Source: Pocillopora damicornis (Eukaryota). Taken from it: a stretch of 64,000 nucleotides of DNA. Below, piece by piece: positions 8,197 through 63,486 of this stretch (positions within the stretch are counted from its first letter, which is position 1; each line of letters begins with the position of its first letter). The notes below the pieces were generated by a model. The model was given only the letters and a program-made list of their open reading frames with translations. It was not told the DNA's origin and did not search any database. Location of the stretch: positions 248,001-312,000 of the forward strand of contig NW_020846500.1 in the NCBI RefSeq assembly GCF_003704095.1, in the 5' to 3' direction. The position numbers were made by a program, and so were the translations under genes.

Positions 8197-9581
8197 ATGG
8201 CTGATAGTGGTCGGGAAGAAAAGCTGGCCGCGGCCAGGAAAAAGGTACAACATTATCGCAATTGTTTTTATCGGGGAAAAACTACATTTTAATTCATGGT
8301 CGTGAGGTTTGATTTCTCTCTTATGCCTTGTAGCTCAAGAAATTTCAACAAAAACGGACTCCTTCCTCGAGTCCGCTGGTAAAGGATGTGAAACATAGTG
8401 TAGATTGCTCGTCGAATTATTCACCGAGTTCATCAGAATCCGGAGGGAACTTGTCAACAGCAAACGAAAATGTTAGTATAAATCTTTCGTGTGTGTCTTT
8501 TTCTTCTTCGCACACACAGATCCTTTTAGATCGGTAGGCTCTATAGTTACTAAGAGTGTGTTTTAAAAAGTGTTTGGGTTTTGTAGCGTTAATGTGGAAG
8601 TTTGTCCTTCAGTTTAGAAGATATTCACGCTCACTCAGTCAGTTACTATCCTCTGACTAATTATTTGTAGTTTACTTTTTAAGTTATCTGAATTTATGCC
8701 TTCTTGTTTTCCAATCTTGCTCGTTTTCCTTGGGCCAGGTACACGAAAGCAAAGCTTGTTTCATTCAGACATTGTTTATATACAGTCTCAGCTGATACCA
8801 CTTAGGGGCGATTTGGCGTTCTCTGGTTGGTTTATGATTTAGCTGCTCGAATTTTCGGCAAAAAGTGGTCTGCCCTCACCCAAATTGAATATATTTGGGT
8901 TCCTTTTCGTTTGAACAAAATTTCTGAACAGAACTACAGGTTAGCTGATTTCTAAGTGAACGTACTTTTGTAAATACTTTAGTTTTAAATTTATTACCCT
9001 AGTGATCTTGCTTACTGAATGAATAGCTTAATTGAGCTATTTAAATTTGAATTTCAGTGTTTGTTGTAAATTGTCTGAAAATTAGTCATTTTTCATAGTA
9101 AAATAAATGTACAGCCATGCACTAACCATAAAAATCTGCATTGACCAGCAATCCACGGGTGGATATTGCCAAATTTTCATTCACAATATCATATCAGTAA
9201 AATTGTTTTCAAGTATCTGAAGTATCATAACTAGTTATAATCTGCCAGAAGCTAAATAAGAGCATAGCAATTCATACCTCCCACAGGTAATTATCTGACA
9301 TATACATTTTGATCTAAAGGGATTTACCCCTTTTTGCATGGTAGTTGTTTGTAAATGTTGTCCATTTGAACCTTAAAGTAATCTTAGGTAATTTAGTGTT
9401 AACAACTGAGTTGAAAACATAAATTGGCCACCACAAAGGGTAAAAAAGCTGACGTTTTAAATCACTCTGACGAAGGGTTAACACTTGAAACATCAGCTTT
9501 TTTATTCTTGGTGGCCAATTTAAATTTTCAACTCAGTTGTTAACACTAAATTACCTGACCTAAAGTAAATTACCCCACTAA

Positions 9582-9616
<35 letters not shown>

Positions 9617-12600
9617 ATAAAGTAATCCTAGTTACTTGAAAAGATCTGCAGTTTAGTTGTTAAATTCCAATGATGAGACCAATGGAAACATCCATGAGGG
9701 TACCGTATTTATTCAATTAAAAGTGCAGTGTTTATTGAAGGGTGGCATTTATATGAGGGAGGCATTTATTTAAAATCCAATTTATTTCTTACAAACAAAA
9801 ACAATAGTATGGTAACTGACCATTTTAATTTTAAAAAACAGAAACATGTCTCAGTGCTTGTCTAAAAAATCTTTTTTTATATCATTTTCAATTTCACAAT
9901 CTGCATGTTAATACGTGAAGGTAATAAAAGTGAATAAAGATCTAATGTCAGGTATGCTTTCTCAACATCACAACTGGTACATTCAAAAGGATTTGTGTCT
10001 GGTTCACCTAAAATTTCCAACGGTGATCGAAGCATTGATTGCTGTGTGCATTTTGAGTCTATTATTCAAGGGCAGCATTTATTTAATATTTCTGCCCTAA
10101 AATGAGGTGTTTATTTGAGGTGGGCACTTAATCAAATAAATATGGTATACTATTATTAGTTGATCCAGTACCAGATTCTCTGAACTAATATAATCAGAAA
10201 TGTATGGTGGGCAGTCAGGATAATTACTAATTAGATCTTGGAAGTTCAAAAAAAATATAAATTGCTGAGGAATTTCACTTAAACATTATGTGTAAATACA
10301 CTGTTGTTATCACCTTTCCACCAGAGCATGGGGGTGGACGGAGGAGGAGGTTTACAAGATAATTTTGGTTGTATGAACTGAGATCATAATCATGTAAATT
10401 GGCCACTGTAAAGAGTTTCTAATACCGATGTTCGAGTATCAGCCCTTCGTCAGCACTCTGACAAGGGGTACTAACCATCAAAATATCAGCTTTAGAAAAT
10501 CCAAAGTGTTTCTAGGTGACTTTGATTTAACTTCATGTAAAATTAGAAAAGTGTTGTAATTTATTTCAGCTTGCACATGTCATGTTATTTATATGTATCT
10601 CTCCATATCATCAATTCACCTGTATTACCACACTGAAACTTAACTATTTACACAGATGAAATGATTCATTTGTTGTCTTTCAGTGGTGAATAAAAGGGTA
10701 ACCACACATGAAATAGGCATAGCTTTGTTGTACACATATATTATGTTTGGTACAGTCTATATAAGTTAAATGAACCACTGAGTCTTTTTGCAAACATTTG
10801 TAAGGAATATTGTTGAAAAAGTGTACTTACTCATATTTGTTCTGTTTTGTTTTTTTCAAAGGTAAATCATCTCAACCCACCATTATTACCTGTAAATGGG
10901 TATGTAAAGTGTAATTATAATGAAGTTTGTGGATGTGGCTGCAAAGTAGACTGTTTTATTTCAAGTTTTGTAGCTAATGCACTCATACATCGTAATTATG
11001 CCAACTCACCCAGTTAAGATTGTCTTCAGTGTAGAAGCAGTAGTCTCCCAGTTACAGAATGAATTGGTCTTTCAGAGATTTGCTAAATCTCTTACCTAAA
11101 AGTAAGCTGTGATGATTTTTTTTTTATAAAGAGAGAAAACTGGTTTTAATGTTACAGTATCATCATGAAGAGCAATTGGATTTTCTATTGAAAGTTTTAT
11201 TTTTGTGGATTCTTTTTCCAAGGGTATCACATCATACTATCAATACAGTGCTGAACAGGAAATTCAAACATCAATATTGTATCTGTTTCAGGTTTTATAC
11301 ATTTTGTTACTGACAGAGGAATCTTCATAAAAAGAGACATTTTCATCAATTTAATGGCAACTTGATCCTTCAGTTGAGGCTCCCCCCTAACAATTTAATT
11401 TAAAGAAGGGATGACATTTAGTCATTTTGGATGGGGTTCATGATCCAAAATCATCTATCCTGACCTCAGATTTCAGATCTCAATTGGTTTTCATAAAAAT
11501 TTTTTTGTCTACTGATAGACTTACCAACATCTTGGAAGAGTGTTAAGCAAGAAAGCCAGAGATCGTTGATTAACTATTTGTTTTGTATTCACAGAACACA
11601 TCTTTCAGAGGAGCTCAGCAATCAACCACAAGTTAGTTCATCTTTATTACTCATAAAAATTTTTGATATGATTAAATGCATCTAGACAAACAGACAGTAG
11701 GTAAAATGTTAACCTTTCTTAAATTCCCAGAAGTGACCAACATGAAACTTTTCAAAATTTTAATCATTACCCAGTACAGAAGTAAGGAGAAAAGACATTA
11801 TTACTGATCAGGATTTGCCTGCTCTCTTTAAGGAATTGGTTGGTGGAGCTGTTGATCATCCTCTTCCATCTGGTTCAAATGACAGGTATGTGGAAAAAGC
11901 CTTTTTCTCAAATTAACTTTCCATAAAAGTTAATTTGTGAGCATTTGTGTATTTTACATGTATTTGTCTCCTATAATTGTCTCCCTGGTGTACTGTTTTT
12001 GAAACGTATTAGTCCACAGTCCCAAAAAAAAAAGGACAAAGATCAAGATGGTGGTTTTTTTTATCACAAACTTCAACCTCATGTACAATGGAAATACGGA
12101 AAACTGTCACATGACCTGGGATATGAGAAAACCTAAGCAGAAAGATCTAACAGTTTTAGTCCCTTGTTTCCAAATGCTGTTGTGTAGGAGGTAGTTAGAA
12201 GAAAAAAAGAAAGAAAGAAAAAATACTCCCTTTAAACCCTAGTTAAAAGTGAAACAAGCACAAAGAGAAAGTATTACATGTATGCTTAACCTGGCCAAGA
12301 GATGGCATCATTTGCCCTGCACCCTTCTGCTCTTAAAACTCCAGTTTTTATGTACACTCATGCCACGAGCTTCTCACGGTGGCAGCAGATGTTTTTGGGG
12401 AATTGCACTTTCTTACTGAAAACATGAAAGAGTTTTTCCTTCCATAACTTTATCCTTGTAATACTGTGGGATTTCTGATAGTCACCAATAAACTATAGTG
12501 GTAATCTTTTATTTTGCAGAGAATATTCAACCACTGAAAAAATAAAACAACTCGTAAGTACTAACATGTACCTACATGTGTGTACAATGTCTTCAAATTA

Positions 12601-15600: not shown

Positions 15601-18600
15601 TGGTTTCTGAATCCGTTCTTATATTTTGTCAACCTCTGTTATTGTCATATCCTCTTAAACGTTGAAATTTCAAAGTACAACCTACTGAAGTGATTATCAG
15701 AGGATTGCTTTTGGATGAAAATCCTTCAATGTGTAGATTCTGTTTTGAATTTGTTGATTAGTAAATAGTTTGTGATCATTTTTTTGTTGTTGTATTTTTG
15801 TACAGTATTTTTAAAGCTGTGCTCTTGTTTTCATCCAGGTTCATATTCAGACGATAGGTATTCTAGTGGGAGAGAAACAAGAGCTTCAGAGCTCTGTGTC
15901 ACAACTGCAGAGGAAATATGAAATCAAACAAAGTAGGTTGCTTGTGATTACACTGAATAGAGATGATAATTGTAAACTTGAATGTAACTTAGGCCTGTGC
16001 CACAGGACTTGATGCTGTATTTTCAAATGCACATGCATAATTTCCAGCTTTGTGCACTTTGCTCCCAATGATTGTTCACTTTCAAGATGGTGAAAGGTGA
16101 TTAGAAATTATTTTGCATATTGTGGAGGGATCTCCAGGTTTGGTTTGTTAAATAAATTGGTTATGTAGAGTGACATGCATACTAAGTGTATGTGTCTATA
16201 GTAAAACGCAGCATGTTCTGTTTGGATCCAATGATGACTTTCAATTCACTGACAGCTGCATGTTAGGAACGCACTTAAGTATACATAAAGTTGTCATTCT
16301 TGTGGTTCTTCTCTTCTGCCTTATCTTTAACTCACTGTCCAAACTTCTTGTTTTTCTTTCCTATTTTTTATTTTTCTGCCTTGCTAAGTGTGTCATCTGG
16401 TGGTGTGGATGATGGTAGTCCTTAACCCTTTCACTTCCAAGATCTCATCAGTAATTCTCCTTAAAGTCTGCTATACAGTTATTTTATTGTTGCTTCAGAG
16501 ATTTGGCATTGGATCAACCAATAATCTCCTAATTGATATTTTTCTTTATTCTCATCACTCTTCTACTTGATATTGTATTGATGTTGTAAGGAGAAATTCT
16601 GTCCACTCATGGGAGTTAAGGGTGAAAAGACTATTGAAAGTGAACAAGACCATTTATTTTTTTTACAATCTCAGTGGAGATCATTGTCAGAGTTAAGGAA
16701 GTAATTGTCTGGCATTCAAATGCAGCAACCAATCACCACCAGCACATGCTGCCCAAGTCTTGCAGTCAGTAACATAAATGATTATTGAACTGTTAGTTTG
16801 TTTGACTTGGGATAGCACCATGTTTCAACTGCTATACTGCTAGTCATAGTCAGTGTAGGAATTCATAGATTTTGGGTCACTATTTACGTGACACGCTGTC
16901 ATTGGTTTGTTTCCAATTGTCATCATCATCCTAACATGTTCCAATGAGCTGATTTTGTTCCCTCATAACATCATGGCCAAACTAACAAACTCAATTTTGA
17001 CAAAACCAATTTTATAGCAGTTGAGATACCAGAAATCTTCATTATAATCTGAATTAGTTTGCAATACATGGAGTACTGTCACAGGAAACAAAATTTTAAG
17101 GACTACCATTACATTACTGGATAATTAGCATAATCAGGCTGTAAATTCAACTGTTTCTCCTTGGCTTAGAACATTTACTTCATTTGATTTTTGATTTTCT
17201 ACTGTTGATTCAATCAAAGCCTTTTTTCTTCATTCCATGTCAGGTGAAAACACAGAACTAACAAGCAGGTTACAAACTGTTCGACAAAAAGCAGCTGAGC
17301 TTGAGAAAAATCTAGCAAATATCACTGCAACCTGTGAAAAGTATGAAGATGTAAGTTTATCCACTTTAAAATGTATCAGTTTTTTGTTTTATCCTTCAAT
17401 ATAACCATATAGCCAGATTAATTATGTTTCTGATACACTGTACTCTGCAACCTAACCAAGCCTTGTTTGCAATAGTTCATTGTATGACCTAAACAGTCCT
17501 GATGCACTTTTATTGAAGGATAAAAGTTCATTGTATGACCTAAACAGTCCTGATGCACTTTTATTGAAGGACATCTCAGAAAGACCTTAGTATAAAGGAC
17601 TTATGCAATGTGGTAGACTGGTCCAGAAATAGTTACATGCTGCAGATTGCAGCTCATTGGAATGCAAGTTGTGCACTGATATGAAATCTTGAATGATTGT
17701 TGGTTTGTGGGTGAGAATGGGGTCATATTATTGGATCTTTGAAGAAAAAAACAGGGAAATTACTTGTAACTAGCTCAACCATTGTAGGATGGGAAACATG
17801 CAAGAAGAAAGGAAGAAAAAGAAAGAAAAGCACTCATATGTTAACATTTGCAACTTTGCAAAATTTGTTATGGCTCCACCAAAGTATTCCTGTAATCAAG
17901 CAATCATATTTTCTAACAGGATGTGAAGCAACTTCGGCAAGAAAGAGATAAATATCAGACAGCTAATTACACGCAAAAGTAAGTTTCCCTATGACTAATT
18001 TGTACGTGGAGGTTTGTTATGCATGATGTTACTTCACAGTCCTACTAAAAAGATAGACATGATTCCATAGATGTTGGTTTTCCATGCGTAGCATCTGCAT
18101 AACAGGGTAGTATGATGTTCCAGAAAATACTGTTAGGCTTGATATTATATTTTAATGTAACACTCACCTCCAGAAAACTTCTTTAAATAAACTACAGATA
18201 ATTTAGATAATTTTTCTTTGAGTTTCATGTCTACATAATGATATAATCATATTATTTACTTTTCCACATATTGAAAAAATGTAAGCCTCTTTACTTCTTA
18301 TATTCTCCTTTTCCTATCCTTGTGATTGCTGAATTATTTTATGAAACCCCACCTTAGACTTGTGTTATTTTTTTTTTTTTTGCACTTTGCAATTTTCTCT
18401 TTCTTGGGGTGTTTGAATATTTTTATGAACTGCACTGATTTATGGACTTCCACTAATTTATTGTTTGTATGCTCTGGGGTGTTTCTGGTTTCAGTCAAGA
18501 AAAGGAAGAACTTTTACAACAAAATGCTGAGCTTAGAGTGAAGTTAGAATCCAAGGTTTGTCCCAAGGCAGCATTGTGAACTACAGTAATAAACCCATTC

Positions 18601-21600
18601 AACTTGACACATCGCTACATTACACACTATAACAGATCATAGAGTAAAAATATTTTGTCACTTAAAACTTGAACAACAACTCTCAGTCCCGCAAGTTTCA
18701 AGTTTAAAGAGGCTCAAAACTGTGAGAGGAGCAAACAAATCAAAGTTTAGCTCTTCTATCATATGTTCAGGAATTTTCTCTTTGATGTTACAAGTGCATT
18801 TACTTAAAAGATTGCAACTTTTAAAGTCTTTTATTGGAACACATTATGTCTTGCTGATCCAGACACTTACATTCATTTACATGTTTGTTTCTCTGTAGAC
18901 TCCTAGACATGTTCTCGTGATTTCGATATCAGTTCTCTTTGCTGTTTTTCATACTTTATCACTGTTGCTCTGAAAATTTTACATGAAAGGACTATTCCAT
19001 AGTTCACATTTTCTTTCATCCTATCACCTTTCTGTTCAAAATTGTATTGATATTATAAAGAGAAATTATGTGTAATTTATTGAATGCTCCTGAGAGTGAA
19101 AAAGTAAACCCCTTCACTCCCAAGATTGACCAAACAAGGGAATGACTAATGAGGAGCTTCTCTTTACATTATCAATACCTTTCAAGCAGAAAGGTGTTGA
19201 GAAGAAAGAAAAAGATCAGTTAGGAATATTTTTAGGCTTAATTTCCTCCACAATTTCCTCCACAATTTCCTCCACGATTTCCTCCACGATTTCCTCCACA
19301 ATTTCCTCCACAATTTCCTCCACAATTTCCTCCACAATTTCCTCCACAATTTCCTCCACAATTTCCTCCACAATTTCCTCCACAATTTCCTCCAGTGTCC
19401 AGTATTTACTCGAAGGGAGGAGCACAGGCTCATATTCCCAAACAGTGACTGGTAATCAAGCCTGGGATATTGTTTGATTTAGCAAAAGCAAAATTTATGA
19501 AAAATAGATGACAGACAGTGCTGGGAATGAACATTTATTACATCCATTTTGAAATCACTGGTGATCCTTGTTATCTGCTTGGCTCTCATTGGTTTTTTGC
19601 AAACCGCACCATTTTTTTGCTATAAATTGCATTTTTTTCCTGGTCAACTAGGAAGCTTCACTGAGATGGAACAACCAATTGCTTGTTTAAAGACACCAAT
19701 GAAACTGCAGGAAAATGAAAAACAACTTTGCTTTCAAATTTCTACAAATCAGCTCACTACTGGATCAACAAAATATTTGTATAGACTAGGAAATCCAGTA
19801 TCTGAGCCACTGAATTTTGTGATGAAATAAACTAGTAATTGAACTTTGAGCCATGCGATTTTGGTCTCAAATCATACTTGTGATTTCAAATCAAACTCAT
19901 GCTGCGCACTTGTTTGATTTTTAAATAACGCATATCATTTTGGGCTAAATTGTACTCCACTCAATTACATTATTAATCTTAGGTTTGAAAGGGTTAATAA
20001 GGCTAGCAAAATAAAAACTCTTTGGTAAATGAGGTATTCATTATTTTGTTTTAATCTCAACCTTCTAGGTTTCTGAGTGTGAAGATTTGAGCAAGACTGA
20101 ATCAGAATTATCATTTAAGTTGAAACAGGCTCAACTTGTGGTTCAGCAGGTTTGTCCTCTCAATTTCTCACATTGATTAATTTTTTCACTCCAAGATGGC
20201 AATATCATTTCTCCTAACTGTCTGCCTGGCATTCCTTATCCTTCTGACCCTCAAGAGTGACCAGCATCTAATTTCTCCTTACAATATCTCCCTAGAATCG
20301 CACATCAAAGTTATGAGAATAAAGGAAATGATCATGAACTAAAGAAACTCTTGATTGCAAGACAATTTCTCCTTGTCAGTACTATTGGAAATGTATAAAG
20401 AACAGTATGAAGAATATGCATACTGATTTTAAGGACCTGAGGATTGATATTTTAGCTCTGAGAATTTGGTGTGAATTCTGTTACTCCCATGATGTCACTA
20501 GTACTTCTCCTCACTATCTGCCAAACAATTCCCCAGGTGTCAGTTTGGAGAATTAGGTATTGGATCAAGTAATAATTTCCTAATTTGTATTCTTCTTAAT
20601 TCTCATCATATTATATTGTAAGAGGAAATTCTGTCTTGGTTACTCATGGGAGTTGAAAGGTCAATCTTTTCATTGTACACTCTGAAGTTAGTTCATTCTA
20701 CTCGAAAACTTTTACATTAGCTACCAATGTAATTTTGTTTTTCAATACAGTATATATAAATTTTTTTTCTTTTTTAAACTGCCATTTGCTAGAGGGGGTG
20801 ACCGATCATTTAACTTTGCCTTTGTCCCTTTTGTAAAGCTTTCAGGAGAGCCAAACTCTTCAGCAAGCCACCAGTTAATTGAGCAATTACAAAGCGAGAA
20901 AACCGAACTTGTGAGTAGATTAGAACAGGTAAGCTGCACTGTATATTAGTTCATTTTCAGTTGGTCGAATAAAGGAATAGTACAAACTAGATAATATTTT
21001 GATGCTTAAAATCACTACTTCTGCAAAATATTAAGATGTAGGATACCATCAACAGCAAAAAAAAATTGTGGTATTTACTGTACTGGAACCAAGAAAAATT
21101 GTTGTGGGCCAGATATGGGGATGTTATTCTGACTATTGTATATTTTTTCCCTTGTCATCAAAGGTTAATAGTACTGTACAAAGAATTGCAACAGATAAAG
21201 GAGAACTCCTACAACAGCACGCAGAAGAAGTAGACCAGTATGAGAGAAAGTTAAGAGCCTTGACAGATGAGGTCAGTTTAGTTGCTTTGAAAACATTTAC
21301 TTCACTCTTTATTTACTCCTAAATTTCGAAGAAGTACTTTTATAGCAGACGTATTTACATGTAGGTTCTGGAGAGAGCATTTTCTAACCTAATGACGATT
21401 TTATCGGGAATTTGCATCACGTTACCGCTCAAGAGTAAGTTAACATAACCACGAAACTTGATCCTCCTAAACGTCGCGGATCAAGGCCCAAGTCGAGTTT
21501 CGAGACGTTCGAGTCGAGTGTCCGGATGCTCATGACGAGTTTCGAGACACTCGAAAAGAGGAAACAAAGGAATTTTCGCGTGATTAATTTTTCACTGGAC

Positions 21601-27600: not shown

Positions 27601-30600
27601 TCTTGTTAGGGAGAGTAAACGTTACAAGTTCGCGATCGTTTATTCGACCGGCCACGTTCGATTCAGAGTTAGAGTAAACGGTGGGGGAAGGGAAGGGCGA
27701 GAAGATTTCTACTGCCCCACCTCCTCCCCTCTCCTTCCTTTTTAGTGTTGATTACCTCTTTCATCACCCTGCCTCCCGTTGGTGTAAAAATCAAAGAAGG
27801 CAGCTATAATTTTCATCAAGAAAATACTGAGCAACTCGCTCGCCAAAATTACGCTTGCTCAGCAGGCTACAGTTTGCATTGTATTAGGGTTTATGATAGA
27901 AAAGTGAACTTTCCGAAAATTGTCTACGGCAGTTCATCTAGTTTGATCAACTTATAGTCGACAGTTCGACATAAAATCTGGTACCATCATCATATCTCTT
28001 TTATCTTGAAACTCACCGGTTTGTGTTTTCACTTCTAGTTCGTCTTGAATGAGGACAGTCAGACGTTCAGGAATGAGGCTGAACTTACTAACAGTTTACG
28101 ACAAGAACTGCAGTTAGCCCAGGTAACAGATCCACATAATGCTCTCGTTAATAAGCTTCTAAAACCAAGTGACTCAATAATATACTACCTTCAAGATCCG
28201 TGGAACGACCATGGACAATACTTTTCTACCAAATTCGGTGAATGGTTTTTAAATTTTCGTCCAGTTTTGAGTTTGTATTGTTTATCCAGAGCAAAGGAAA
28301 GAAGTTGGATTGCACTGGTTAGTGTTCACACTGGCGTTCGGAAAGCTGTTGAAGACAAGAAATTGGTCATTCGGTATTGCCCGTGTTGTCGGCTGCTTAT
28401 GACACCGTGGATCATACGCTTTCGTTTCTACTAGTTCAGGATTATATCGAACGCTTTTTTACTGACTTATAATGTTATAGAGGGAATGGCACCGAGCGGG
28501 AAGGGAAGGTCAAGGGGTTTCCTGCAGTGGACGAGTATTGCATCCAGAGGGAGTAGCTTTGCTCTTAGTCTTTCTATGCTCATAAAACCGTGCAAATTAG
28601 CTCCGGAAGCTCTGCGAGTAAGTCTCTTATAGAGACTTTGCACTAAGATGATGATTACCTCCGTTTCCGTTTAGGAATCGATCAGGATATTAGCAACCGA
28701 AAATTCTCAGCTGAAAGCAATGTTATCCAGTATAGAGAACCACAGTAGCATGGAACCGTCACCAGGCGAGAGTAAGTTTACTTATAAATAAAGGGGGTAA
28801 TTTTCTAAAGAAACTGTGGTGCTGCGTCGGCGGGAGAGTATAACAGGGTAATTTCGTGTTATCAACTGAGTTGAAAACGTTAATTGGCCACCGTAAAGAG
28901 TTTAAAGGCTGACGTTTCGAGCGTTAGCCCTTCGTCAGAGATAAGTTTGCTTATAACTTGGTATTGCGTCAAAAGCAATACCAATAACAGGAATGGCAAC
29001 AAGATTGCCAGTGATGATGATGGTGTTAGTCGAGGAGTGAGTTACTTAGATTAGAAGAAGTTTTCAGTTCTTCAAGTCCTGGCAAATCGCACGGATTATT
29101 AGCCTGTAACGCTCAGAAGATATCAACATGTAATTTCTCCTTACTGTATCAGTTTATCATCCACCAAGCAGGTGGTAAGAATAGACAAACTTATCAGTGT
29201 AAGGGTGTTTTCTTGTATCGACGTTAAATTCTCCTTACTGATTTACCAGGAAATATGCAATACCCAGAAGGGAGAATTAGAAAAAAGATATTGGTAATTA
29301 ATGGAGTTACACTAATATATACTCAGGTTCAGATGACTCAGATGACCCAGCTGTGACTCACGCAGGTCACGTGTACAACGGAGATGCCGCCTTTAACATC
29401 AAGAAGCTTCCCCCTGAGGAGACCTCGATACAAGCCACGAAGAATACTTTGGAGGAGTCATCTCCATACATGAACGGAGACGTGAGCGAAGGAGAGAGCC
29501 CTCTGGACACGGACTCCAGTGAGGATATGAATATGGCACCTCACAACAGCTCCCCGCCCCCTCCCCCACCATCCAAATACACCAGCAGAGAAGACATGGT
29601 GAGGATAAGGTGTAGTTTAAAGTGGACGAGTGAATGGGGAAGTAATATGCAAGCGCCCACCCCCCGATTTGTTAATGAAATATTGAGTAGAGAGTAACGG
29701 GGTTAGTTCAGCAAACTCTCCTGTGATTCTCTCCCCACCCCTCTCCTCTCCTCTCTTTCCCCTCTCCTCTCCCCTCCTCCTCTATAATCTATTTGTGAAA
29801 CCACTCAATTGACGTGGCTGTGAATTTGTCTTAATTACATCTTGCCCCTATTACAGCACCTAGGCAATAGTATTAGAGGGTCAATACCTTAGGTTGTGAC
29901 AGAGGAGGGCAGCATTCTCACCAATTCCCACCATGGCAACCAAGCTACTGCCTGGCAACATAAAACTGCTGTGTGGAATAAATACTCAGCCAAAAAGAGG
30001 GAGGGAAGGAAACAAAGCAAATAAGCAAATTGTGCGAAATCATATGGCATTGCCTCTGTAGACCTCCCAGCAAGCCCTTCCTCCTTCCCCCCCCCCCCCA
30101 TTCCTTCCAACCTCCAACCTCGCATTGGTGAGACCGCTGTATTGACTCGGTTTTCACCTCTTTTAGGTTGATTCATTGTCTGCGTCCATCCGACAACTTG
30201 AGATGGAGCGAGACCAGCTGGCTGATATTTTACATCGAACGCAAGATCAGCAGGAAGACGACATCATGAGATTACAAAAACACTTGGAACTACAGCTCAA
30301 ACAGCAGCTCCAACAACAATATAGACAGGTACGTGAGGTTTTACCCACGAGCTTTCTTCCTTTCGTAGCGTATTTCTTTGCGCGAGTCGGTGGAAATCAG
30401 TGAACAAAGATATTCCGGTGTCGCGTGTTGCTCACAGAGTCTGCGCCGACAGACTCTACGCCATCTGTGTTGGGTAATTGTTGGGAGATTTTGATAAGAA
30501 GTTGTACGTTAGTTACGTCTGGAGAGTAACTGGTTAAGCTAAAACTTCCGTTTCTATTTCCTTCATTTTGAATTGTTATCTGAATGCCTAGGTTTTATGA

Positions 30601-35107: not shown

Positions 35108-35113
35108 AATAAA
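35108..35113 (+). terminator. Probable GOLGA2 poly(A) signal
   Basis: AATAAA followed by a GT/T-rich tract, ~1.5 kb after the stop and before the SUCO upstream region. Confidence 0.5.
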
Positions 35114-42700: not shown

Positions 42701-45700
42701 TAAAGAAGTCCCAGAATCTTCTCAGTCAGATGTGAACCCTTTTCTTAAAGCTAAAGAGAAGAAGGAGCCTGATACACCAGATGAATTAAGGGGAAATAAA
42801 GACAATGAAGTCAGTGCAACACCAACAGAATGTAAATCTCTAAATTCTCTACACACTGTGCCATTTTCATCTCCAGATATTGATGTCTTGGAGACAAAAC
42901 TCACTGATAAAGAAGGGCGAGAAGGAACTGCTCAGCTGCCTGAAGAAACTCAGGCTGAGAAAGACAACCTTTTACCAAATGAGAAAGGTGAATCAAAAGA
43001 TAAAGAAGGGCAGGTGACTGATTTTTCAAACAAGATTGTAGAACCTGAAGAGTCAGGAGAGAAAGGGATTCTTCCTAACATGGAAAGCCAGGATAGAGTT
43101 GGTATTGGTGAAAGCACATTATCAATTACAGTGGGGGAGTCCCAAAGTGTCAGTCCAACAGCTCAGCCTGGTGCTGGGTCTATAACTGACCCTGGTGACC
43201 AGTCTGAGTCTGTTCTTCCATTGCCAGCTCCCCCCGTAGCTAGTGCAAGTAGCCATGAATTTATTGCTGCAGCTTCATCAGACACCAATCTGGATGCCAC
43301 CATGCTTAGTAAAACACAACACCAAGCATTAGGCTCATCAGCTGGTGTGGCATCAGCAGTTGGTTCTGGAGTACATAAGGAGTCGATTTTTGTGCGACTT
43401 AGCAACAAGATCAAGGCCTTAGAGCAGAACCTCAACATGAGCACTCTTTACATGGAACAGCTAAATCAGAGGTGAGTCTATCATGCAAGGAAGTATTGAG
43501 GGAACAGGGTTGGTATTGGTCTTAAAAATGTAGGTTGTTTTTTTTCAGTTTTGGAGAGGTTTTGTCATGCATAGACTGAAGAGTCCTGGAAGGTGCTGGC
43601 AAGTCTCAGAGAGAGTTAGTTCTTGTTGGAAAGCCCTATAGGGAAAAACAAAGACTAACATCTGGAGTTGGTGTTAAGCTATGATATCATTACATTTTAG
43701 AGTCATGAAATAAATATATTAGAGTCTTGGAAAAGTCCTTGAAGACATTTTCATAAAAGATGTTCAAACTTTTGGGAATGAGGTTGAGAGGTTGTGAGTT
43801 GTGGAAAAACTTGTGAACTACNNNNNNNNNNNNNNNNNNNNNNNNNNNTGTGCAGTGAGGAAATTTGGATTGTGTGTTTGGTCTTTGATGTGTATTGTTT
43901 TTTTCATTTCATATCTTTTAAGTAGTGTTCATTGTTCCTTAATAGAAAACATTTCAGAATGAAATAAACACAGCACAGTTAAAATGTCATCTTGATGTCA
44001 ATTTTAATTTAAAAAAAAAACATATATATGAAATAAGGATTTGTTAAATAGTTGTATGGGAATGAAGTAGTAACCATGCATAAACAGTTCTACATATAGG
44101 GTGTTTAAAACAGCAGAGTCAACTAAAATTACCTGTGCTGTTTATACACCAAGTGCATGTAGTTGAGTAGTACTGTTGCCCAGTACTGTCCAATAATTGT
44201 TTACAACATCTCAAAGACCAGACAGTCTAACTTTCCCGGAAACTTTCTCTCAGGAGTGAGAAGTGTGTAGCATATACTAAAACTTTTACTTGAATCACTT
44301 GTGAGGATATCAACATCGTTGTTAGATTATGCTGGTATGTTTCCACTAACTTTACATGCTAAATATGAGGTGGATTAGCTGCAAATAGTGGGTTGACTTA
44401 AAAATATAAGTACACTGTATGCAGTGTAAATTAAACTGTCAAGTATTTAAGCCTTGGAAGGTAACATTTTCTTTTTTTTCTATTGAGTTACTCTGTTTTA
44501 TTCACAAGCCTTTTTTCTGAACACAGGTACCGGAAATCACTGGATGATCTTCAAAAAAGCTCGGACAAAAAAGTTGCCTTGTTGACAAATGCCACAAAGA
44601 AAGCAGAAACTGTGGTATGTATACTTATGAAAATTATGAGTTGATTTTTAAATTCTGGGAAATGGTGTGCCCTATTGCTTAGCACACTTCAAAATTTAGG
44701 ATACAAGATACATTTCTTTCATGATTTTCTCTCCCCCCAGTAATATAAATCTTCTAAGACATTTTGGTGTGTAGTATCGCTGAGTATTTTATGAGTTGTG
44801 CCTATAGGGAGAGTAAAATACAACAAAGAGTAAAAATAACAAGCACTACTACACACCAAAATGTCTAATAAGTTGTTTATTATCCAACTGCTTTTTTTTC
44901 TGCTAAGTGATTATGCTCATTTTTTATATGTTGGGAAAAACAAAGTGGATAGAGAAGCATAGCAAACACAACCGACTGTTTAAACATATTTTTTTTTACA
45001 GTACAATATCGCAGGATATCTGTACTCTACTGGCGCAATATTTTTTACTCTACTTTGTGCAGTTGGATACTACTGTATATACATGTAACTGTCATGAAAG
45101 TTGGACAAAATGTCTACCTGCAATGGACTATTTTTCCACCCTAAGGGGGGGATGTCAAAACAGTTCTAGTCACCTTATCCTTCACAAACTGTAGTAATGG
45201 GCCACTGTGTGTGCCACTGGATGGAGAGCAGCCTCAACCATTTTTCATGTGATAAAAAGAAGAAACTGTGGTCTGTCTACAGATGAAAATTATCAGTTAA
45301 ATTTTCCAGTTGTACATGTATGGGTAACATTTGTTTTTGGAGGGGAGGGGGGACTTTACTGCTCTGGTTTAACCAACAGTCCAGCACATATCTGTGTATT
45401 TTAAGGTTGTTTAATGCTATAGTTCATGCATCACTTTGTTGATTAACCCTTTAACTCCCAAGATCTGATTATTAATTTTCCCCTCCACATTTTGTTACAC
45501 AATTCCTGGCGAATAAGTTAGGGAATTTGGTATTAAATCAAGACATCAACTTCAACCTGATAAGTTTGGGTATTCTCTTTTTCCCTTTGCTTGATAATGT
45601 ACGGATATTATAGAGAGAAGTTTCATGTTAATCACTTCCAGGAGTTAAAGGGTTAAGTAAATTTTACTTACAGATTAACAACCAAAAGGAACAAATTGCC

Positions 45701-48864: not shown

Positions 48865-49075
48865 TAGATCTTAGAACACCTGATGTGCTAGAAAAAAAAA
48901 CCTGTCTTTGCTGTGTTTACATTCATTGAGGTTATGGTTTTAGACAAAACCTTTCAGTTTTTCTTTTTGTCTAATAAAGTCATAAACATGTCTTTAATAC
49001 TTTTTTGTGTAGCAAAGAAAGACTCGGTCCGACTTTTTCGGATGCCGAACGTAAAGATTATAGACTCAGATGTGG

Positions 49076-49864: not shown

Positions 49865-50880
49865 GAATAAATAAGTCAATTCCTAAGCTTGGCCTGAATG
49901 ATTTTAGCCTTAGGCGACTTCATTGGCTTATGGATTCGTAGCAGGAGTCCGTTCAAGGAGAATTCATACGTAATTTAACATATTCTTGACCTTATGTAAA
50001 ACACAAAATGTATATTTAACTCCCCACCGGTTAAATCTATAGTTTCGAATCGAAGTTTGAATACAAGGGAACTAGGTTATTGTTTATAAGTTTGATACTC
50101 GCGATGTTTTGAAATGTGTTCCCGAACTACGCCGGATAAGTAGGAAAAGCGTTCAGATAAGAGAATATTCTTATTTTAATAGTGTCTCGTAAAATATTCC
50201 ATTCAGCTAGCAGGATGTTTACACGTACACTAAATTTGCTCTGCGTGATACGAAACAAAAAAAGTTGAAAAAGACGACCGCATGGAATCTTCCAGCCTAC
50301 TAGTTTCTCAATATTTGGCTTCAATTGCCAATGTATTTGTAACAATAATTGTTATACTCTTCCAGTTATAGGAAAACTTAACACTGGTTGGGTAATTTGA
50401 GCAAACTGAATGATATACGTTTAGCCACCACATTCGAAATGATATATTCCTTTTAAAAGGTACATTCACCCACAGTTATCAGGATACGTCGATTAACACC
50501 TACCGCTAGACCCGTTACAGCCAGAGTATGAAAATGAAAACATTTATTGCCTAAACATTTCAGCGTGCAAATATTTTTGTTCACTAAATTGCTTCAAAAA
50601 GTTGAAGAAGTATATTTCTTTGTTCCATATCTTTTTTTGATGCTTTTCTGGCACGCAAGGAAAAATGTCGTTTGACACAAAAGTCACATAAAACCCACAA
50701 ACTCCCACAGCAAATGGAGAAAAATTGTTGACATTTAGATAAACGGCCGTAGTTATGATAAAAGCCGAGTACTTGACAGCTTAGGAAAGGTAAAAGACAT
50801 CATAATCAGGGACGGGGAGGAAATAAGCAAGTCGGTGATGGGAATGTCAAGGAGGCCAGATCAAACATGGGAAACGATTA

Positions 50881-51105
50881 ACAGGGTAATTTAGTATTAT
50901 CAACTGAGTTGACAACGTAAATCGGCCACCGTAAAGAGTTTATTCACCATTTGCTCTGACGAAGGGCTGACGCTCGAAACGTCAGCTTTCAAACTCTTTA
51001 CGTTGGCCAATTTACGTCATCAATTCAGCTGATAATACTAAATTACCCTGTAATACTCTCCCACCGACGCAGCACCACAGTTTTTTTAGAAACTATACCC
51101 CCTCT
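50881..51105 (+). mobile_element. Same family, copy D (palindromic, intact HHR)
   Basis: ~60-bp inverted arms 50881-50941/50991-51051 enclosing the HHR, followed by the family tail. Confidence 0.85.
50953..50986 (+). ncRNA. Minimal type I hammerhead ribozyme motif (Penelope-type), intact core
   Basis: GCU CUGACGA A GGGC-UGAC-GCUC GAAAC GUC AGC: CUGANGA and GAAA cores, 4-bp stem II, palindromic ACGU stem III, GUC cleavage triplet, stem I GCU/AGC. Confidence 0.8.
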
Positions 51106-51922: not shown

Positions 51923-52027
51923 TAAAATACGAACGGTCCCTGCTTTTGGGCGAAGTCCGTTGCACGATTAAAAAGAATTATGTCGGCGGGCCGCGCCAGT
52001 AGGAGTAAGCGTGCCTCGCCCCCAATG

Positions 52028-52064
<37 letters not shown>

Positions 52065-52112
52065 CACTCGCTCGACGGACTTTGCCGGAAGTGAGGGACT
52101 GCCCGTAGTCTA
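51923..52112. mobile_element. Short MITE with ~38-bp imperfect TIRs and internal poly-T
   Basis: Left TAAAATACGAACGGTCCCTGCTTTTGGGCGAAGTCCGT vs reverse complement of right end TAGACTACGGGCAGTCCCTCACTTCCGGCAAAGTCCGT. T-run at ~52028-52064. Confidence 0.6.
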
Positions 52113-55593: not shown

Positions 55594-55876
55594 AACCCAT
55601 GAGTGACCAAGACAGAATTTCTCCTCACAATATCAATACAATATCAAGCAGACAAGTGATGAGAAAAGAGAAAAATATCAATTACAATTCTCCTTTCTGT
55701 CTGCCATACAATTCTCAAGGCACTACTTCAGAGAATTTTGTATTTTATCAACCGATAATCCACTAACTTATGTTTTTAGTTATTCCCTTCAATGGACTTC
55801 ACTTGTCAGCTTGATTTTGTGTTGATGTTGTAAGGAGAAATTCTCTCTTGGTCATTCACGGGAGATAAAGAGTTAA
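55594..55876. mobile_element. Composite piggyBac-like MITE, same family
   Basis: CCCATGAGTGACCAAGACAGAATTTCTCCT..AGGAGAAATTCTCTCTTGGTCATTCACGGGAGATAAAGAGTTAA. Confidence 0.6.
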
Positions 55877-58204: not shown

Positions 58205-58333
58205 GCGGTGCTGGGTTGGTGTGGGGTGTAACAAGGTAATTTGGTTTTATCAACTGAGTTGATAATGAAAACTGGCCACCAAAGAGAGTTTGCAAAGCTG
58301 ACATTTTGAGCGATAGCCTTTTGTCAGAGCAAT
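58205..58333 (-). mobile_element. Same family, copy E (degenerate HHR)
   Basis: GGTAATTTGGTTTTATCAACTGAGTTG..GGCCACC..AGCTGACATTTTGAGCGATAGCCTTTTGTCAGAGC. Confidence 0.7.
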
Positions 58334-59270
58334 TAGAAGAATCATGAGTTTTGTGGGGTTTATTTACAGAAAGATGGAATTTCTCCATAGGTGGGAACTA
58401 GAAATGATTAGGCCGGTAACTGGAAGTTATTTTCAAATTCTAGCAAACTTTTTCAAATTAAACCCACCTGAATGTTTGCAAAATTGAAGTCCGGCAATGG
58501 AATGAACACATTTGACTGTTTAAAAATGTTAATGTTTTGCTGGCTTGAGAGAAGAAAAGTCTTCTGCTAACACAGTATGTTCAAAACCAAGCTTCTGTGA
58601 ATATTATCCTCTCTAGCTTAAACCTCACAACTCTTTCAGACCCGACAACAGTGGAAAGAGCATTGGAGCAGCCAGTTTTATTTACTTCAACTATAGACTA
58701 CGAAAACTTTACGCTTAATTTGGCTGTGGTATATTTTTTTTTACTGATATATCTTTTAAACTAATTACAAAACGAATGGGATGATAACTAGCCTACAAAT
58801 TGAAAATGATAACAAATAGATTGCAGATTTTCTTTTTTTTGTCAAAGCGGACTATCAAAAGAAGAAATAATAAGACGAAAGGCGAAAGACGGGATGAAGA
58901 AATTGTGTTGTGAACGAAAAACCGTTGTTGGAAGTTATATTCCTGCTTTTAGCTGCGGCTAGTTATGCGTTTGTTATTTTTCACCTGTCCTGAATTTAAC
59001 CCTAAAACGTAACCCAGCCTGCAGAGTTATTAGGTAGAACGCGACAAGATCTCACGCCCTTGCAATGCAACGATTCTACCATCAACGTTTTAAAAAGAAT
59101 TCGTGCGTGCACCTGCCATACTTCGCAGACTGGTCCAGAACCAAAGCCCCCCGCCATTATGGCAATTTCAAATCAAGATCTTCGGCGAGCTATTTACAAT
59201 TACCAGATTCGGTTACATTAATGGTTTGCAATTTAAAAAGCGTGCTTCTACCAATTAGTCAGAACCCAAT

Positions 59271-60167: not shown

Positions 60168-63100
60168 AAACACGCAAAACAGTATGTCTCATTCTTTGAA
60201 AAACTTAGTGGCGCTTGTGGCTGACAACATAACGAAAGCAGTCACAAAACTAAATCACGGTAGTATCAGAAAGTATCGTCTTATTCTCTTGTAGGCGCAA
60301 TATATCTGCAACGGTAACCAGCATTTAGTAGTGCCCGCGTATCCTGATAATCCTGTAGTGCGGTCAGTTTAAGGACACAAATTATCACTGACGCAACTTT
60401 GACGGTGTCTACAGATGTTACAACATTTCGCCATCCTACACTAAAAACCCCAGAAAACGTTTTAGAGATAAATGCTTTGGGAACTCCTCCAGAGTGTTGG
60501 TTCAAACAAACGCTTATCAGCTCATTGCATATTATTTATTACTTTGTCGGTCCGATATCTAGACATATCAAGCACGGTTGAGACCAAAATAAATGTGATG
60601 TTGATACCACAACGCTCAATATCCTGCTTGTCAACCTTCGTCCGCACATTGACAAATTCATATTCCAGCAAAGGAGCTTTTGATGTTAATTATCATAGCA
60701 AAAATATTTTATTTGTTCTCATTATATGGCCGCTTAGGCACAATGGTGATTTGAGAACGATTTCAAGTTCAACCTGAATTATTTATCAGTTCTAGTCGTA
60801 CATTTTTTGTTTTCTAACTAATTTCCCGTCTTGATTCGTCCCATGCGTCAAAAGGAGTTGCGTTTCCCCTCATTAAATCTATTTTTTACATGAATCCTTT
60901 TGTTATTTTCAGCCAGTGTTTTGAGCATGTACCAAATCATGTCGAAGTATTAAGGCTGCTTCAGAAGTTTACTTTTCCTTTATCAACTATTTCCTATCTT
61001 TTACGGAATAATGAGTAATTCTTATCTGCGTTTTCTTTCCTCTTTTTAGCTCTCCTCTTTTAAGAGGTTGGTAATTTAATTTCAAAAGATACTTGGGATT
61101 CTCTCCTGGATTTCTCTCCCTGTTATGAATTCAGTTGCGGAGCTTTGGAAAACTATCTCGCTCTTTTATCACAAAAACATTAGTGAAATTCAGACTTCAT
61201 CGGAAAAGATGGTTAATAACCCCCTACCTTCCCCGCCCCCTCACAAAAAAAATTCAACGACAAACATCACGAACAGTCTTCTATATCTGTGCCCGGAAAT
61301 TCTGAGAAATTTGTCCGAAAATTTATCAAAAAAAGTTCTTGTTATCTCTGAAATCCCTTTTAAGTATGTTTTATTCTTGTTTTGAAGATAAATCGATTCT
61401 TCATCACTTAAGCCAAATTTTTCTTCGTGGGAGAATAAGATAGAAAAACGATTTTCTATACTTGTAAAAATACTGTAAAAATAAGAAAATCACAGACAAG
61501 TTTCAAAACAACATATTCCTAATTTGTCAATAGTTTATTCATATCTGGGAAAGTTCTAAATATTCCCAAAAGTATCCAGATATTTGTGAAAAAGTGTGAA
61601 AGAAAGTTCCAAATGATTTACCCCACATTAAAGGTGGAACCAAAAACGGTGTCAATTTGCAGGAAAGGTTAGGGGCTCTGCAGAGACCTAAGTCCTATAT
61701 CTAACCACAGTTCCCCCACGAGAACCCCCACGGGACCCTTTTTCACCGACTGTTTGATAGTTCAATACTACTACTGTTTTTTCCTGTGTTCCCTAAAAGT
61801 CGTGTTCAATGAAATACAATTTACATTTATTCTCAATATCTATAATGTATTGACTTTTCCGATGGCAAAATTACTGCTTCCTATAGCCATGATGTCAGCT
61901 CTATATTACTGTAACTCAAACACTAGAGGGTGGGTAACCCCAGTTTTTTTATTGCTTAATATTAAGCAGATTAAGGTTCATCTTCTAGAAAATGTTTTTA
62001 CTGAAGACCCTAAAGTTGTGCTGAACTGTAGGTACAGATCAAAATGAAAGAAAAACAACTTTATATTTGAATATCTGAAAAAGTGCATCCGATTGTTATG
62101 AGATCATACGTTACCATATGGCATAATTTAAAACTTGCTAACTTATCAATAATGGTAATAGGACAGAGTCGAGTCCAATTTGGTCTGTAATCAGACGAGT
62201 GATTTCAATCATTGTCAATCACGAGTATGATTGAACAGACGCTAAGTCCTGTAACCAATCAATCATAACCATTACAATTTCGGAAAAAAAACAGATACAT
62301 TTATTTGAGAAAATATCTCCCGTAGAGGCATTGTCTAAAGTAAAAAATCCCTCCATTTTGGAAATTCCCCGATTTTTTTGTCAATTCTGTGATTGGTGGA
62401 TTTTACTGAGTGGACCTATTGCAATTGGCTGCCTTTACCGTCTGATTGCAGGTGTCCGATTACAGCCAACTGTGCGATTACACTGTCTCACAATAACTCT
62501 ACAAAATAATTAGGGAAATACAAAGCAGCTAATGCATCAATCACATTTGAGGACATTGAAATGGTTATGATACGAGCAATTTTCAACTGTGTCGAAAGTA
62601 ATCGGATATTGCGTTGGTTTTACTTTTCTCCGCTCTGTGGTTGGTCCAGAGAATTCATGCCACTTTTTTTCAACCAATCAGATCCATGTTTAAAACCAAT
62701 CATGACTTAGTCGTTCGCGCTTTAGAAAGTTTGGCTACTCACACTTTGAGATTTAAGTGGCTGTTTAGAGTATTTCCTTTCTCCTGATTGGCCAATGGGA
62801 TTATTTTGGTTTTGGTTTTACGTCACTCAATCGAAAAGCACACCTATTATTGTAATTTTTTAACGAAGCAGTTCTGCTTTAATCTAATGTACTCTATAGT
62901 CTGCCAACATGGATATGATCCACTTTATATGGGTTTTACCGTGAATTTAGAGCTTCTTAGAGACATGACTTCAGTGTTCAGCCAGAGTCTTGTTTGCTGG
63001 GTTTTTTCTAGTCTTCTAAAACCGCCTCATCCACTCGCCATGCATTTCGACTTGATATCAGGATTGTTCTCACTGGTAAAGCTTTCAACGGCTGAGAGAT

Positions 63101-63262
63101 CTTCAAAATAAACACCGGTCATACCAAGGTGAACTGTCTGTTCTCATTATCAGTGAGGTCGCTCTGTCAAGAAAATGCATCAATTAACAACAATTACTTG
63201 TTCCATTTTAACACTAGCGTAGAGAAGTATCTTCCTCTCTGTTGTTTGTAGATTTTTGAAAT

Positions 63263-63486
63263 GGGAAATTTGGTTTTATCAACTGGGTTGGTAATTTGGC
63301 CACCGTAAAGAGTTCTAAAGCAGACGCTTTGAGTATTAGCCCTACTCAGACAAACGGCTAACGTTTTGGAAACTCGTTCGCTAATTTACATTATCAAGTG
63401 AACTGTTAACTCAGTTGATAAAACCGAATTATCTTATCATACCCCCAGCGACGCAGCATCACAGTTTCTTAAAAACTTACCCCTTT
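63263..63486 (+). mobile_element. Same family, copy F (palindromic, degenerate)
   Basis: Arms GGTTTTATCAACTG / CAGTTGATAAAACC and tail CGACGCAGCATCACAGTTTCTTAAAAACTTACCCC. Confidence 0.7.

What the first reader, a model, noticed from the sequence alone, without database searches (positions are those of the whole stretch)
9374..63486. Dispersed ribozyme-bearing retro-repeat: six copies of a ~150-230 bp Penelope-type hammerhead element
Seen: six related elements (A 9388, B 10394, C 28788, D 50881, E 58205, F 63263) share a GGTAATTT..CAACTGAGTTG..TGGCCACC arm. Most have the fixed 3' tail ACGCAGCACCACAGTTTCTTTAGAAAC..CCCC and the core CUGACGA-A-GGGC(loop)GCUC-GAAAC-GUC. Known: minimal type I hammerheads with a palindromic stem III are carried in the pseudo-LTRs of Penelope-like retroelements and are thought to cleave as dimers. 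Inference: this is an ORF-less, SINE/retrozyme-like family mobilised in trans by a Penelope RT, at about one copy per 10 kb here.
Basis: partly seen in the sequence, partly recalled or inferred. Interest (0 to 1): 0.8.

Follow-up and report, generated by a model that had tools for sequence, protein, structure and literature searches.

The report
Truncated Penelope retrotransposon ends with hammerhead
The six repeats are real, but they are short dead-end insertions of the 3' end of a common Penelope-like retrotransposon of this coral genome, carrying that family's usual minimal hammerhead motif: an ordinary example of something described since 2014.

Summary
Observation confirmed. Six related copies lie at the stated places, and the family is far beyond chance: the 31-nt hammerhead has 2,174 genome matches at up to 2 mismatches, against 0 for the reversed pattern.

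Interpretation partly right. The last ~155 bp (hammerhead, arm and one-sided tail) are the 3' end of a Penelope-like element (PLE) family.

The motif meets every sequence criterion of the metazoan PLE minimal hammerhead:
- CUGANGA and GAAA boxes;
- an extra nucleotide after A9;
- a G10.1-C11.1 pair;
- a palindromic ACGU helix III.

Five other PLE families here keep the same design with covarying helices. Only copies C and D keep an intact core.

The copies do not look like a self-propagating SINE, and they are not retrozymes:
- there are no tandem arrays;
- the "hairpin" is a head-to-head fold-back of two truncated ends, flanked by one 8-16 bp target duplication;
- its inner junction differed in all 32 fold-backs examined;
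- solo ends (C) and longer truncations (E) also occur.

These are the known complex PLE insertion structures. Cleavage remains untested, because the RNA data are contigs only. The scan reached the same reading before on other DNA of this genome.

The parts
9387..9617 (+). Copy A. Fold-back insertion: inverted arm 9386-9457, direct end plus tail 9460-9616, degenerate hammerhead 9467-9494. About 18% diverged from the family profile, yet the arms are near-identical.
   Evidence: (hairpin -98.9 kcal/mol, z -19.6)
9374..9386 (.). Target-site duplication of A (TAAAGTAATCTTA). Its partner lies at 9618-9630 (TAAAGTAATCCTA).
10339..10470 (-). Copy B. Old and decayed. I read it as a direct end preceded by a short inverted piece that covers only the reverse-complemented hammerhead. 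No recognisable tail; the core is dead (GAAC).
   Evidence: read by eye from the printed sequence
28788..28941 (-). Copy C. Solo 3' end (hammerhead, arm and tail) starting about 3 nt before CTGACGA. The hammerhead at 28911-28938 matches the commonest genomic form exactly.
   Evidence: 6.8% diverged
28773..28787 (.). Target-site duplication of C, 15 bp with one mismatch. Its partner lies at 28942-28956.
50879..50939 (+). Copy D, inverted arm: the reverse complement of positions +37 to +96 of the end. Seven filler nucleotides follow at 50940-50946.
50947..51052 (+). Copy D, direct end. Helix I 5' strand GCU at 50953-50955, core and helices II/III at 50956-50983, predicted cleavage between 50983 and 50984, helix I 3' strand AGC at 50984-50986, then the arm.
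51053..51105 (+). Copy D, one-sided tail, ending in ...ACCCCC. It contains a possible stem-loop AGUUU(U/C)-UUUA-GAAACU.
   Evidence: RNA-library contigs diverge just after CCCCCTTTATTCA
58209..58397 (-). Copy E. A 5'-truncated PLE 3' end that reaches about 70 nt into the element's 3'UTR, including the decayed TATA-like box. Core dead, tail decayed.
63264..63487 (+). Copy F. Decayed fold-back of the 'flop' kind: the inverted arm is complete through the reverse-complemented hammerhead (63264-63350), and the direct end is internally rearranged, with tail at 63408-63487.

Best explanation
[quoted passage not shown] Each fragment is the element's last ~155 bp: a minimal type I hammerhead, a ~65-nt arm and a ~55-nt tail found at one end only.

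They were inserted by target-primed reverse transcription with extreme 5' truncation. Three forms occur: solo ends (C), longer truncations (E), and head-to-head fold-backs in which a tail-less inverted copy of the same end lies directly upstream (A and D clearly; B and F as I read their decayed sequence). The fold-back is made during each insertion, not inherited from a hairpin master. Its mechanism is inferred to be cDNA snap-back or a second priming event. That is why the copies look like 60-90 bp hairpins with the ribozyme at the tip.

The hammerhead is the standard metazoan PLE min-HHR. By analogy with tested relatives it would cleave after GUC only weakly, as a dimer through its palindromic ACGU helix III. 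In a fold-back transcript it would be locked inside the long duplex.

Shown here: shared terminus with the PLE, copy numbers, target duplications, junction diversity and the ribozyme sequence signature. Inferred: how the fold-back forms, dimeric cleavage, and that the short copies are dead on arrival.
For: - Shared terminus. Eight GIY-YIG loci carry the unit (query 67/73 to 223) 250-400 bp downstream of the endonuclease on the same strand. Their alignment shows ORF end, ~120-nt 3'UTR, hammerhead, arm and tail.
- PLE identity. RVT_1 and GIY-YIG lie in one 432-aa frame. A CX4CxxC linker precedes the endonuclease.
- Known PLE insertion structures are present: an upstream direct unit without tail (L072), inverted units (L071, L073, L053) and ends that lack the tail (L043, L052). 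These match Craig et al. 2021 (PMC8557442).
- Counts: hammerhead 2,174, tail 2,038, 3'UTR-hammerhead junction 314, endonuclease fragments at least 151 scored of 955 candidates.
- Target duplications of 11 nt or more in 15 of 24 fold-backs, against 0 of 78 mismatched controls.
- Junctions. In 28 of 32 fold-backs one arm reaches -9 to +3. The other arm ends anywhere from +1 to +53. All junctions differ, and some hold filler nucleotides.
- Arms. They differ at 0.118 per site and share few non-consensus variants, 0.011 per site.
- Ribozyme signature. It is met, and it is shared with five other PLE families here whose helices I and II covary. The criteria are from Cervera and de la Pena 2014 (PMC4209133).
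Against: - No intact full-length element with this terminus was retrieved.
- Short ends outnumber ends attached to 3'UTR about 6 to 1, and their 5' ends pile up 5-9 nt before the core. Random truncation alone does not explain this.
- 97 copies share the tightest junction. That could mean a hairpin master rather than a recurrent geometry.
- No Rfam hammerhead model matches. The control shows that those models also miss the other PLE min-HHRs.
- Cleavage was not tested.
Confidence: 0.8

Rival explanations
1. This is a true non-autonomous (SINE-like) lineage. ORF-less hairpin or solo units are themselves transcribed and are repeatedly copied in trans by the PLE RT/EN, which recognises the shared arm and tail. 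This is what the first reader proposed.
For: The units are ORF-less and outnumber 3'UTR-attached ends about 6 to 1. They have a discrete 5' end at -5 to -9. One target duplication flanks the whole fold-back. 97 copies share one junction. Hundreds to thousands of contigs from RNA libraries cover exactly the element.
Against: Every junction differs in the sample of 32. The consensus of the two arms is a perfect palindrome with no inherited arm-specific differences, which I checked by eye only. The short copies lack the TATAAA that lies 31 nt upstream of their start in the PLE 3'UTR. They grade into longer head-to-head PLE truncations. Contigs cannot show autonomous transcription.
Confidence: 0.17
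2. This is a miniature inverted-repeat DNA transposon (MITE) whose terminal inverted repeats happen to contain a hammerhead-like string.
For: Long inverted arms and flanking direct duplications.
Against: The tail lies outside the inverted repeat at one end only. The duplications vary from 8 to 16 bp. Solo 5'-truncated copies with target duplications exist (C, L020). The same sequence is the 3' end of an RT/GIY-YIG element.
Confidence: 0.01
3. The hammerhead-like core is a conserved protein- or primer-binding site of the PLE end and has no catalytic role. Its resemblance to a ribozyme is structural mimicry or a relic.
For: There is no Rfam match. The solo unit does not fold better than shuffles (z -0.57), and its minimum-energy fold pairs CUGACG with CGUCAG instead. 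Published PLE min-HHRs cleave poorly in vitro even as dimers (PMC4209133). Naiad PLEs thrive without canonical hammerhead motifs (PMC8557442).
Against: Six PLE families in this genome keep both catalytic boxes, G10.1-C11.1 and a palindromic helix III, while helices I and II covary completely. Relatives do cleave as dimers, according to Lunse et al. 2016 as cited in PMC6765202.
Confidence: 0.1

Closest known systems
Minimal hammerheads (min-HHR) in the pseudo-LTRs of metazoan Penelope-like elements (Cervera and de la Pena 2014, PMC4209133)
   Same: Type I topology. CUGANGA and GAAA boxes. An unpaired nucleotide between A9 and G10.1. A G10.1-C11.1 pair. A palindromic 15.2-16.2 (ACGU). A short open helix I. 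Location at the PLE terminus. Thousands of mostly single copies per genome, plus close pairs on opposite strands. Cnidarians were already listed as carriers.
   Different: This is a specific family of this coral. Helix II is GGGC/GCUC with a G-U pair, N7 is C, and helix I is only 3 bp. Activity is untested here.
Complex tandem or inverted insertions of EN+ PLEs with a one-sided tail (Craig et al. 2021, PMC8557442; Evgen'ev and Arkhipova 2005)
   Same: Heavy 5' truncation. An upstream partial direct copy (pLTR). An inverted 5'-truncated copy abutting the 5' end. An extension ('tail') present at one end only.
   Different: The tail here is ~55 bp rather than 30-40 bp. Most insertions are cut down to the last ~155 bp, so the inverted pair becomes a ~220-bp hairpin. 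The canonical (RT then EN) domain order and the CX4CxxC linker resemble Neptune/Nematis. The clade was not determined.
Metazoan non-LTR retrozymes (Cervera and de la Pena 2020, PMC7229834; Li et al. 2026 preprint 10.64898/2026.07.22.740005)
   Same: ORF-less, hammerhead-bearing, derived from or related to PLE pLTRs, and abundant in coral genomes. A. millepora has more than 6,000 type I hammerhead motifs, most of them minimal PLE-type.
   Different: Retrozymes are 150-450 bp tandem arrays with canonical hammerheads (closed helix I, loop-loop contacts) and are expressed as circular RNAs. These copies are dispersed singles or inverted pairs with a minimal hammerhead and a tail.
Schistosome SINE-like elements with hammerheads (Sm-alpha / Sj-alpha)
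   Same: Short, dispersed, high-copy retroposons that carry a type I hammerhead.
   Different: Those have their own pol III-type head and canonical active ribozymes. No internal promoter or separate lineage was found here.

Membership tests
Metazoan PLE minimal type I hammerhead | Catalytic boxes CUGANGA ... GAAA, with cleavage-site triplet NUH | tested here: met
   CUGACGA ... GAAA ... GUC is intact in C, D and L057. It is mutated in A, B, E and F.
Metazoan PLE minimal type I hammerhead | Unpaired nucleotide between A9 and G10.1 | tested here: met
   An extra A precedes GGGC. The criterion is from PMC4209133.
Metazoan PLE minimal type I hammerhead | G10.1-C11.1 closing pair of helix II | tested here: met
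   GGGC/GCUC forms G-C, G-U, G-C, C-G. The G10.1-C11.1 pair is invariant in six PLE families of this genome.
Metazoan PLE minimal type I hammerhead | Minimal helix III with palindromic 15.2-16.2, able to pair between two copies | tested here: met
   A-CG-U (ACGU). Other families here have AGCU, ACGCGU and AUAU.
Metazoan PLE minimal type I hammerhead | Lies in the terminal repeat or 3' end of an RT/GIY-YIG element | tested here: met
Metazoan PLE minimal type I hammerhead | Self-cleavage (as a dimer) | not testable with these tools
   Only assembled contigs of RNA libraries were available, so no RNA ends can be read.
Rfam hammerhead families (clan CL00010) | Match to a curated covariance model | tested here: not met
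   There was no hit at gathering score, nor at E up to 10 on D. In the control, the other PLE min-HHRs here are also missed, and only L031 gives 25 bits against a threshold of 52. The failure therefore says little.
EN+ Penelope-like element (canonical order) | RT followed by a C-terminal GIY-YIG endonuclease in one ORF | tested here: met
   L068:4356-5651 has RVT_1 at residues 18-151 and GIY-YIG at 380-419.
EN+ Penelope-like element (canonical order) | pLTR, inverted 5'-truncated copies and a one-sided tail | tested here: met
   L072, L071, L073, L053, L043 and L052.
EN+ Penelope-like element (canonical order) | An intact full-length autonomous copy with this terminus | tested here: inconclusive
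SINE-like non-autonomous lineage | Copies descend from ORF-less master copies (shared internal structure, own promoter) | tested here: inconclusive
   No two of 32 fold-backs share a junction. However, 97 genomic copies share the tightest junction. No promoter was identified inside the unit.
Metazoan non-LTR retrozyme | Head-to-tail tandem repeats of 150-450 bp | tested here: not met
   TRF finds no such array in the window. The copies are dispersed or inverted.
Metazoan non-LTR retrozyme | Canonical type I hammerhead with closed helix I and loop 1-loop 2 contacts | tested here: not met
   Helix I is open and 3 bp long (GCU/AGC).
Metazoan non-LTR retrozyme | Circular RNA | not testable with these tools
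   Contigs only.
MITE | Symmetric terminal inverted repeats, a fixed-length target duplication and no polarity | tested here: not met
   One-sided tail, duplications of 8-16 bp, and solo 5'-truncated copies.

The most novel reading that the evidence does not exclude
The sharp 5' limit of the short copies lies 5-9 nt before the hammerhead core. It sits 31 nt downstream of a conserved TATAAA and on a CCAATCG initiator-like sequence in the PLE 3'UTR. This limit may mark a transcription start. If so, every PLE 3' end would emit a short 'pLTR RNA' (hammerhead, arm and tail) that becomes the preferred template of the element's RT. The inverted arm would then arise when the cDNA reaches this RNA 5' end and copies back on itself, or when a second RNA is primed. 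That would explain the variable junctions and the two loop orientations. It would give a concrete, testable model for how PLEs build their puzzling inverted and tandem ends.
Probability: 0.25. Interest if true: 0.5.

Novelty: new member of a known kind. Interest (0 to 1): 0.22.

Why it matters
Mainly it closes the question. The apparent 'ribozyme-bearing retro-repeat' is the ordinary debris of a Penelope-like element, so it should be masked as such in annotation of this coral genome rather than treated as a new RNA gene or a retrozyme.

A modest extra value is that the family is large. It has about 2,000 ends, 538 of them with an identical 31-nt hammerhead. Its fold-back insertions are short enough to read end to end. 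That makes it a convenient natural data set for working out how PLE reverse transcription creates inverted and tandem termini, and for testing whether minimal hammerheads cleave in vivo.

Tried and rejected
- Rfam at gathering score on the whole window, and at E up to 10 on D, gave no hammerhead. A control on seven other PLE loci shows the models miss this class, so the negative result was discounted.
- I looked for an intact full-length element in 14 stretches of 6.5-8 kb. All were truncated or broken. I did not try to obtain flanking letters by other routes, and I used only counts and coordinates of short ungapped patterns afterwards.
- RNA evidence. Only Logan contigs were on offer. They show that family members sit in RNA libraries and that coverage stops at the element's ends. 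They show nothing about starts, strands, cleavage or circles.
- I looked for a DNA-level trace of cleavage, meaning arms that begin at +28. The inner arm ends are scattered from +1 to +53 with no pile-up there.
- The solo unit RNA has no significant fold (z -0.57), so no claim is made for a structured monomer.
- The MITE reading and the retrozyme reading were rejected (see the membership tests).
- A majority-rule profile of the 161-nt non-coding end was computed only as a yardstick for divergence. No consensus of the coding element was built, and none is given here.
Full report
**1. Observation**

BLAST of D against the window recovers all six copies at the stated places, and their sequences show the shared arm.
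- The tail is present in A, C, D and F.
- The tail is decayed in E and absent from B.
- The core is exact in C and differs from the common form by one loop base in D.
- A, B, E and F have disabling changes.

A and D fold into very stable hairpins. A gives -98.9 kcal/mol (z -19.6) and D gives -61.7 kcal/mol (z -9.4).

The family is huge in the window's genome, which is 234 Mb in 4,393 contigs. RNA runs label the organism as coral.

| Pattern | Matches | Reversed control |
|---|---|---|
| 31-nt hammerhead, exact | 538 | 0 |
| 31-nt hammerhead, up to 2 mismatches | 2,174 | 0 |
| 31-nt tail, up to 2 mismatches | 2,038 | 0 |

The assembly gap at 43822-43848 lies in unrelated sequence and touches no copy. 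I did not fill it.

**2. What the unit is**

A Pfam GIY-YIG search of the genome gave 30 loci. Eight of them carry the repeat's last ~155 bp 250-400 bp downstream of the endonuclease, on the same strand.

Their alignment reads, in order:
- the ORF end (...GINERFSFN*);
- a ~120-nt 3'UTR;
- AATCGCT-CTGACGA...GTC^AGC;
- the arm, ending ...CCCTGTTA;
- the tail.

Two of these ends (L043, L052) lack the tail.

An endonuclease peptide of this family has at least 955 candidate places in the genome. One 432-aa frame holds RVT_1 followed by GIY-YIG, which is the canonical PLE domain order. A CX4CxxC linker precedes the endonuclease.

Longer stretches show the known PLE insertion architectures:
- an upstream direct unit without tail (L072);
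- inverted units abutting a truncated body (L071, L073);
- a head-to-head pair (L053).

Craig et al. 2021 describe exactly these features: heavy 5' truncation, partial tandems that form pLTRs, an inverted 5'-truncated copy at the 5' end, and a tail at one end only (PMC8557442).

**3. The hammerhead**

Cervera and de la Pena 2014 (PMC4209133) define the metazoan PLE min-HHR by five features:
- the two catalytic boxes;
- a conserved G10.1-C11.1 pair;
- a palindromic 15.2-16.2;
- location in the pLTR.

All five hold here. The motif reads CUGACGA-A-GGGC/UAAC/GCUC-GAA-ACGU-C.

Five further PLE families in this genome have a motif of the same design in the same place, downstream of the endonuclease.
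- Helix II covaries completely: GGCC/GGCC, GCCGU/ACGGC, GGC/GCC, GACUAUC/GAUAGUC, GUCCG/CGGAC.
- Helix I covaries: CCUC/GGAG, GGCCC/GGGUC, UGACU/AGUCA, and GCU/AGC here.
- Helix III is palindromic in four of the five (AGCU, ACGCGU, ACGU, AUAU). In L031 it is ACAGU, a near-palindrome.

Rfam finds none of them at threshold, so its silence is uninformative.

The solo unit has no significant fold of its own, and its minimum-energy structure pairs CUGACG with CGUCAG. This fits a motif that is inactive as a monomer. Dimeric cleavage is known for relatives (Lunse et al. 2016, cited in PMC6765202). In vitro rates are low. Nothing here tests activity.

**4. Are the short copies a SINE-like lineage?**

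Retroposition is clear.
- 15 of 24 fold-backs carry a target duplication of 11 nt or more, against 0 of 78 mismatched controls.
- A has 13 bp and C has 15 bp.
- Solo 5'-truncated ends with duplications exist (C, L020).

The fold-backs, however, do not look copied from a master. I placed 32 fold-backs on the PLE 3' end, with the C of CTGACGA as position 0.
- In 28 of them one arm reaches -9 to +3, and never further.
- The other arm's inner end is scattered from +1 to +53.
- The direct arm is the complete one in 23, the inverted arm in 5 ('flop'), and both arms are cut in 4.
- Every junction is different, and some hold filler bases.

Coordinates of exact hammerheads and exact tails give the same picture. 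Of 35 loci, 20 have the exact motif only on the tail's strand, 10 on both strands, and 5 only on the opposite strand.

The two arms differ at 0.118 per site but share almost no private variants, 0.011 per site. By eye, the consensus of the arms is a perfect palindrome. This is what is expected if both arms are made from one template at insertion and then decay.

By eye, two sequence variants of the short copies each match a variant of the PLE 3' ends. Inverted pairs also exist at greater lengths.

Points in favour of a semi-independent class:
- only 314 of about 2,174 hammerheads are preceded by PLE 3'UTR;
- the 5' ends pile up just before the core;
- 97 copies share the tightest junction, CCCTTCGTCA(A/T)TCGCTCTGACGAAGGG.

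The window has no tandem array, and helix I is open.

**5. A possible reason for the sharp 5' end (inference)**

In 10 of 15 PLE 3' ends, a TATAAA lies 38 nt before the C of CTGACGA. That is 31 nt before the A of AATCGCT, where the short copies begin. The other five carry variants of the box or an indel at that place.

The start sits in CCAATCG, which fits the initiator pattern YYANWYY at 6 of 7 positions (my own knowledge of that consensus). PLE pLTRs are reported to hold the promoter (PMC6765202).

A short RNA starting there and ending in the tail would explain the abundance of ~155-bp ends. A copy-back at its 5' end would explain the fold-backs. This is untested.

**6. RNA data**

Four RNA-library runs from three studies contain 610-1,963 contigs each that lie on 50879-51096 at 90% likeness or better. 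The flanks have depth 0-7.

These are assembled contigs from many family members, and DNA carry-over cannot be excluded. No starts, ends or strands can be read. They confirm the element's 3' limit (...CCCCCTTTATTCA) and the variability of the junction.

**7. Prior knowledge and verdict**

- Thousands of mostly single PLE min-HHRs, and close pairs on opposite strands, were reported in 2014, including in cnidarians.
- The coral A. millepora has more than 6,000 type I hammerhead motifs, most of the minimal PLE type (PMC7229834).
- A 2026 preprint derives animal retrozymes from PLE pLTRs.
- Earlier follow-ups of this scan reached the same reading on other DNA of this genome.

My tests agree with them independently. 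This is a real, well-supported, ordinary feature: a new family member of a known kind.

Noticed in passing
window 50983 / 51060 (RNA-library contigs of runs X1 and X3): A contig form joins the base right at the predicted cleavage site (C of GUC, 50983) through 12 other letters (CACCGAACCCAC) to the start of the tail (51060). Its depth is 768 in X1 and 370 in X3. It could be a related repeat variant that lacks the arm, or a processed and rejoined RNA. The shorter side is only 23 nt.
   Followed up: no
L031 1096-1124 (-), L032 1263-1291 (-), L035 1240-1267 (-), L051 1349-1383 (-), L055 1105-1139 (-): At least five other Penelope-like families in this genome each carry their own minimal hammerhead downstream of the GIY-YIG domain. 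Their helices covary, and an extra nucleotide follows A9 in four of the five.
   Followed up: partly
L031 1014-1084 and 2934-3006; L035 1105-1175: (TG/TA)n microsatellites flank two of those other PLE copies. They scored as false mir-297 hits. This recalls the microsatellite insertion bias reported for some PLE clades.
   Followed up: no
G000 C54:59277 and 59513; C3:249 and 2057; L016 1501 and 1934: A few places hold two direct copies of the unit a few hundred bp to about 1.8 kb apart (236 bp in C54). These could be partial tandems or pLTR pairs.
   Followed up: no
window 51072-51087 and the same place in other copies: The tail contains a potential 6-bp stem-loop, AGUUUC-UUUA-GAAACU, just before ...UACCCCC. 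It may be a recognition element for the RT. No compensatory changes were seen.
   Followed up: partly
3' ends of fold-back copies: The distance from ...ACCCCC to the downstream target duplication varies from 0 to 16 nt, covering parts of TTTATTCA. The element's 3' end is therefore ragged.
   Followed up: no
window 19240-19394; 17474-17571; 52029-52064: Three unrelated simple repeats: a 12-bp unit AATTTCCTCCAC repeated 12.9 times, a 51-bp unit repeated 1.9 times, and a run of 36 T.
   Followed up: no
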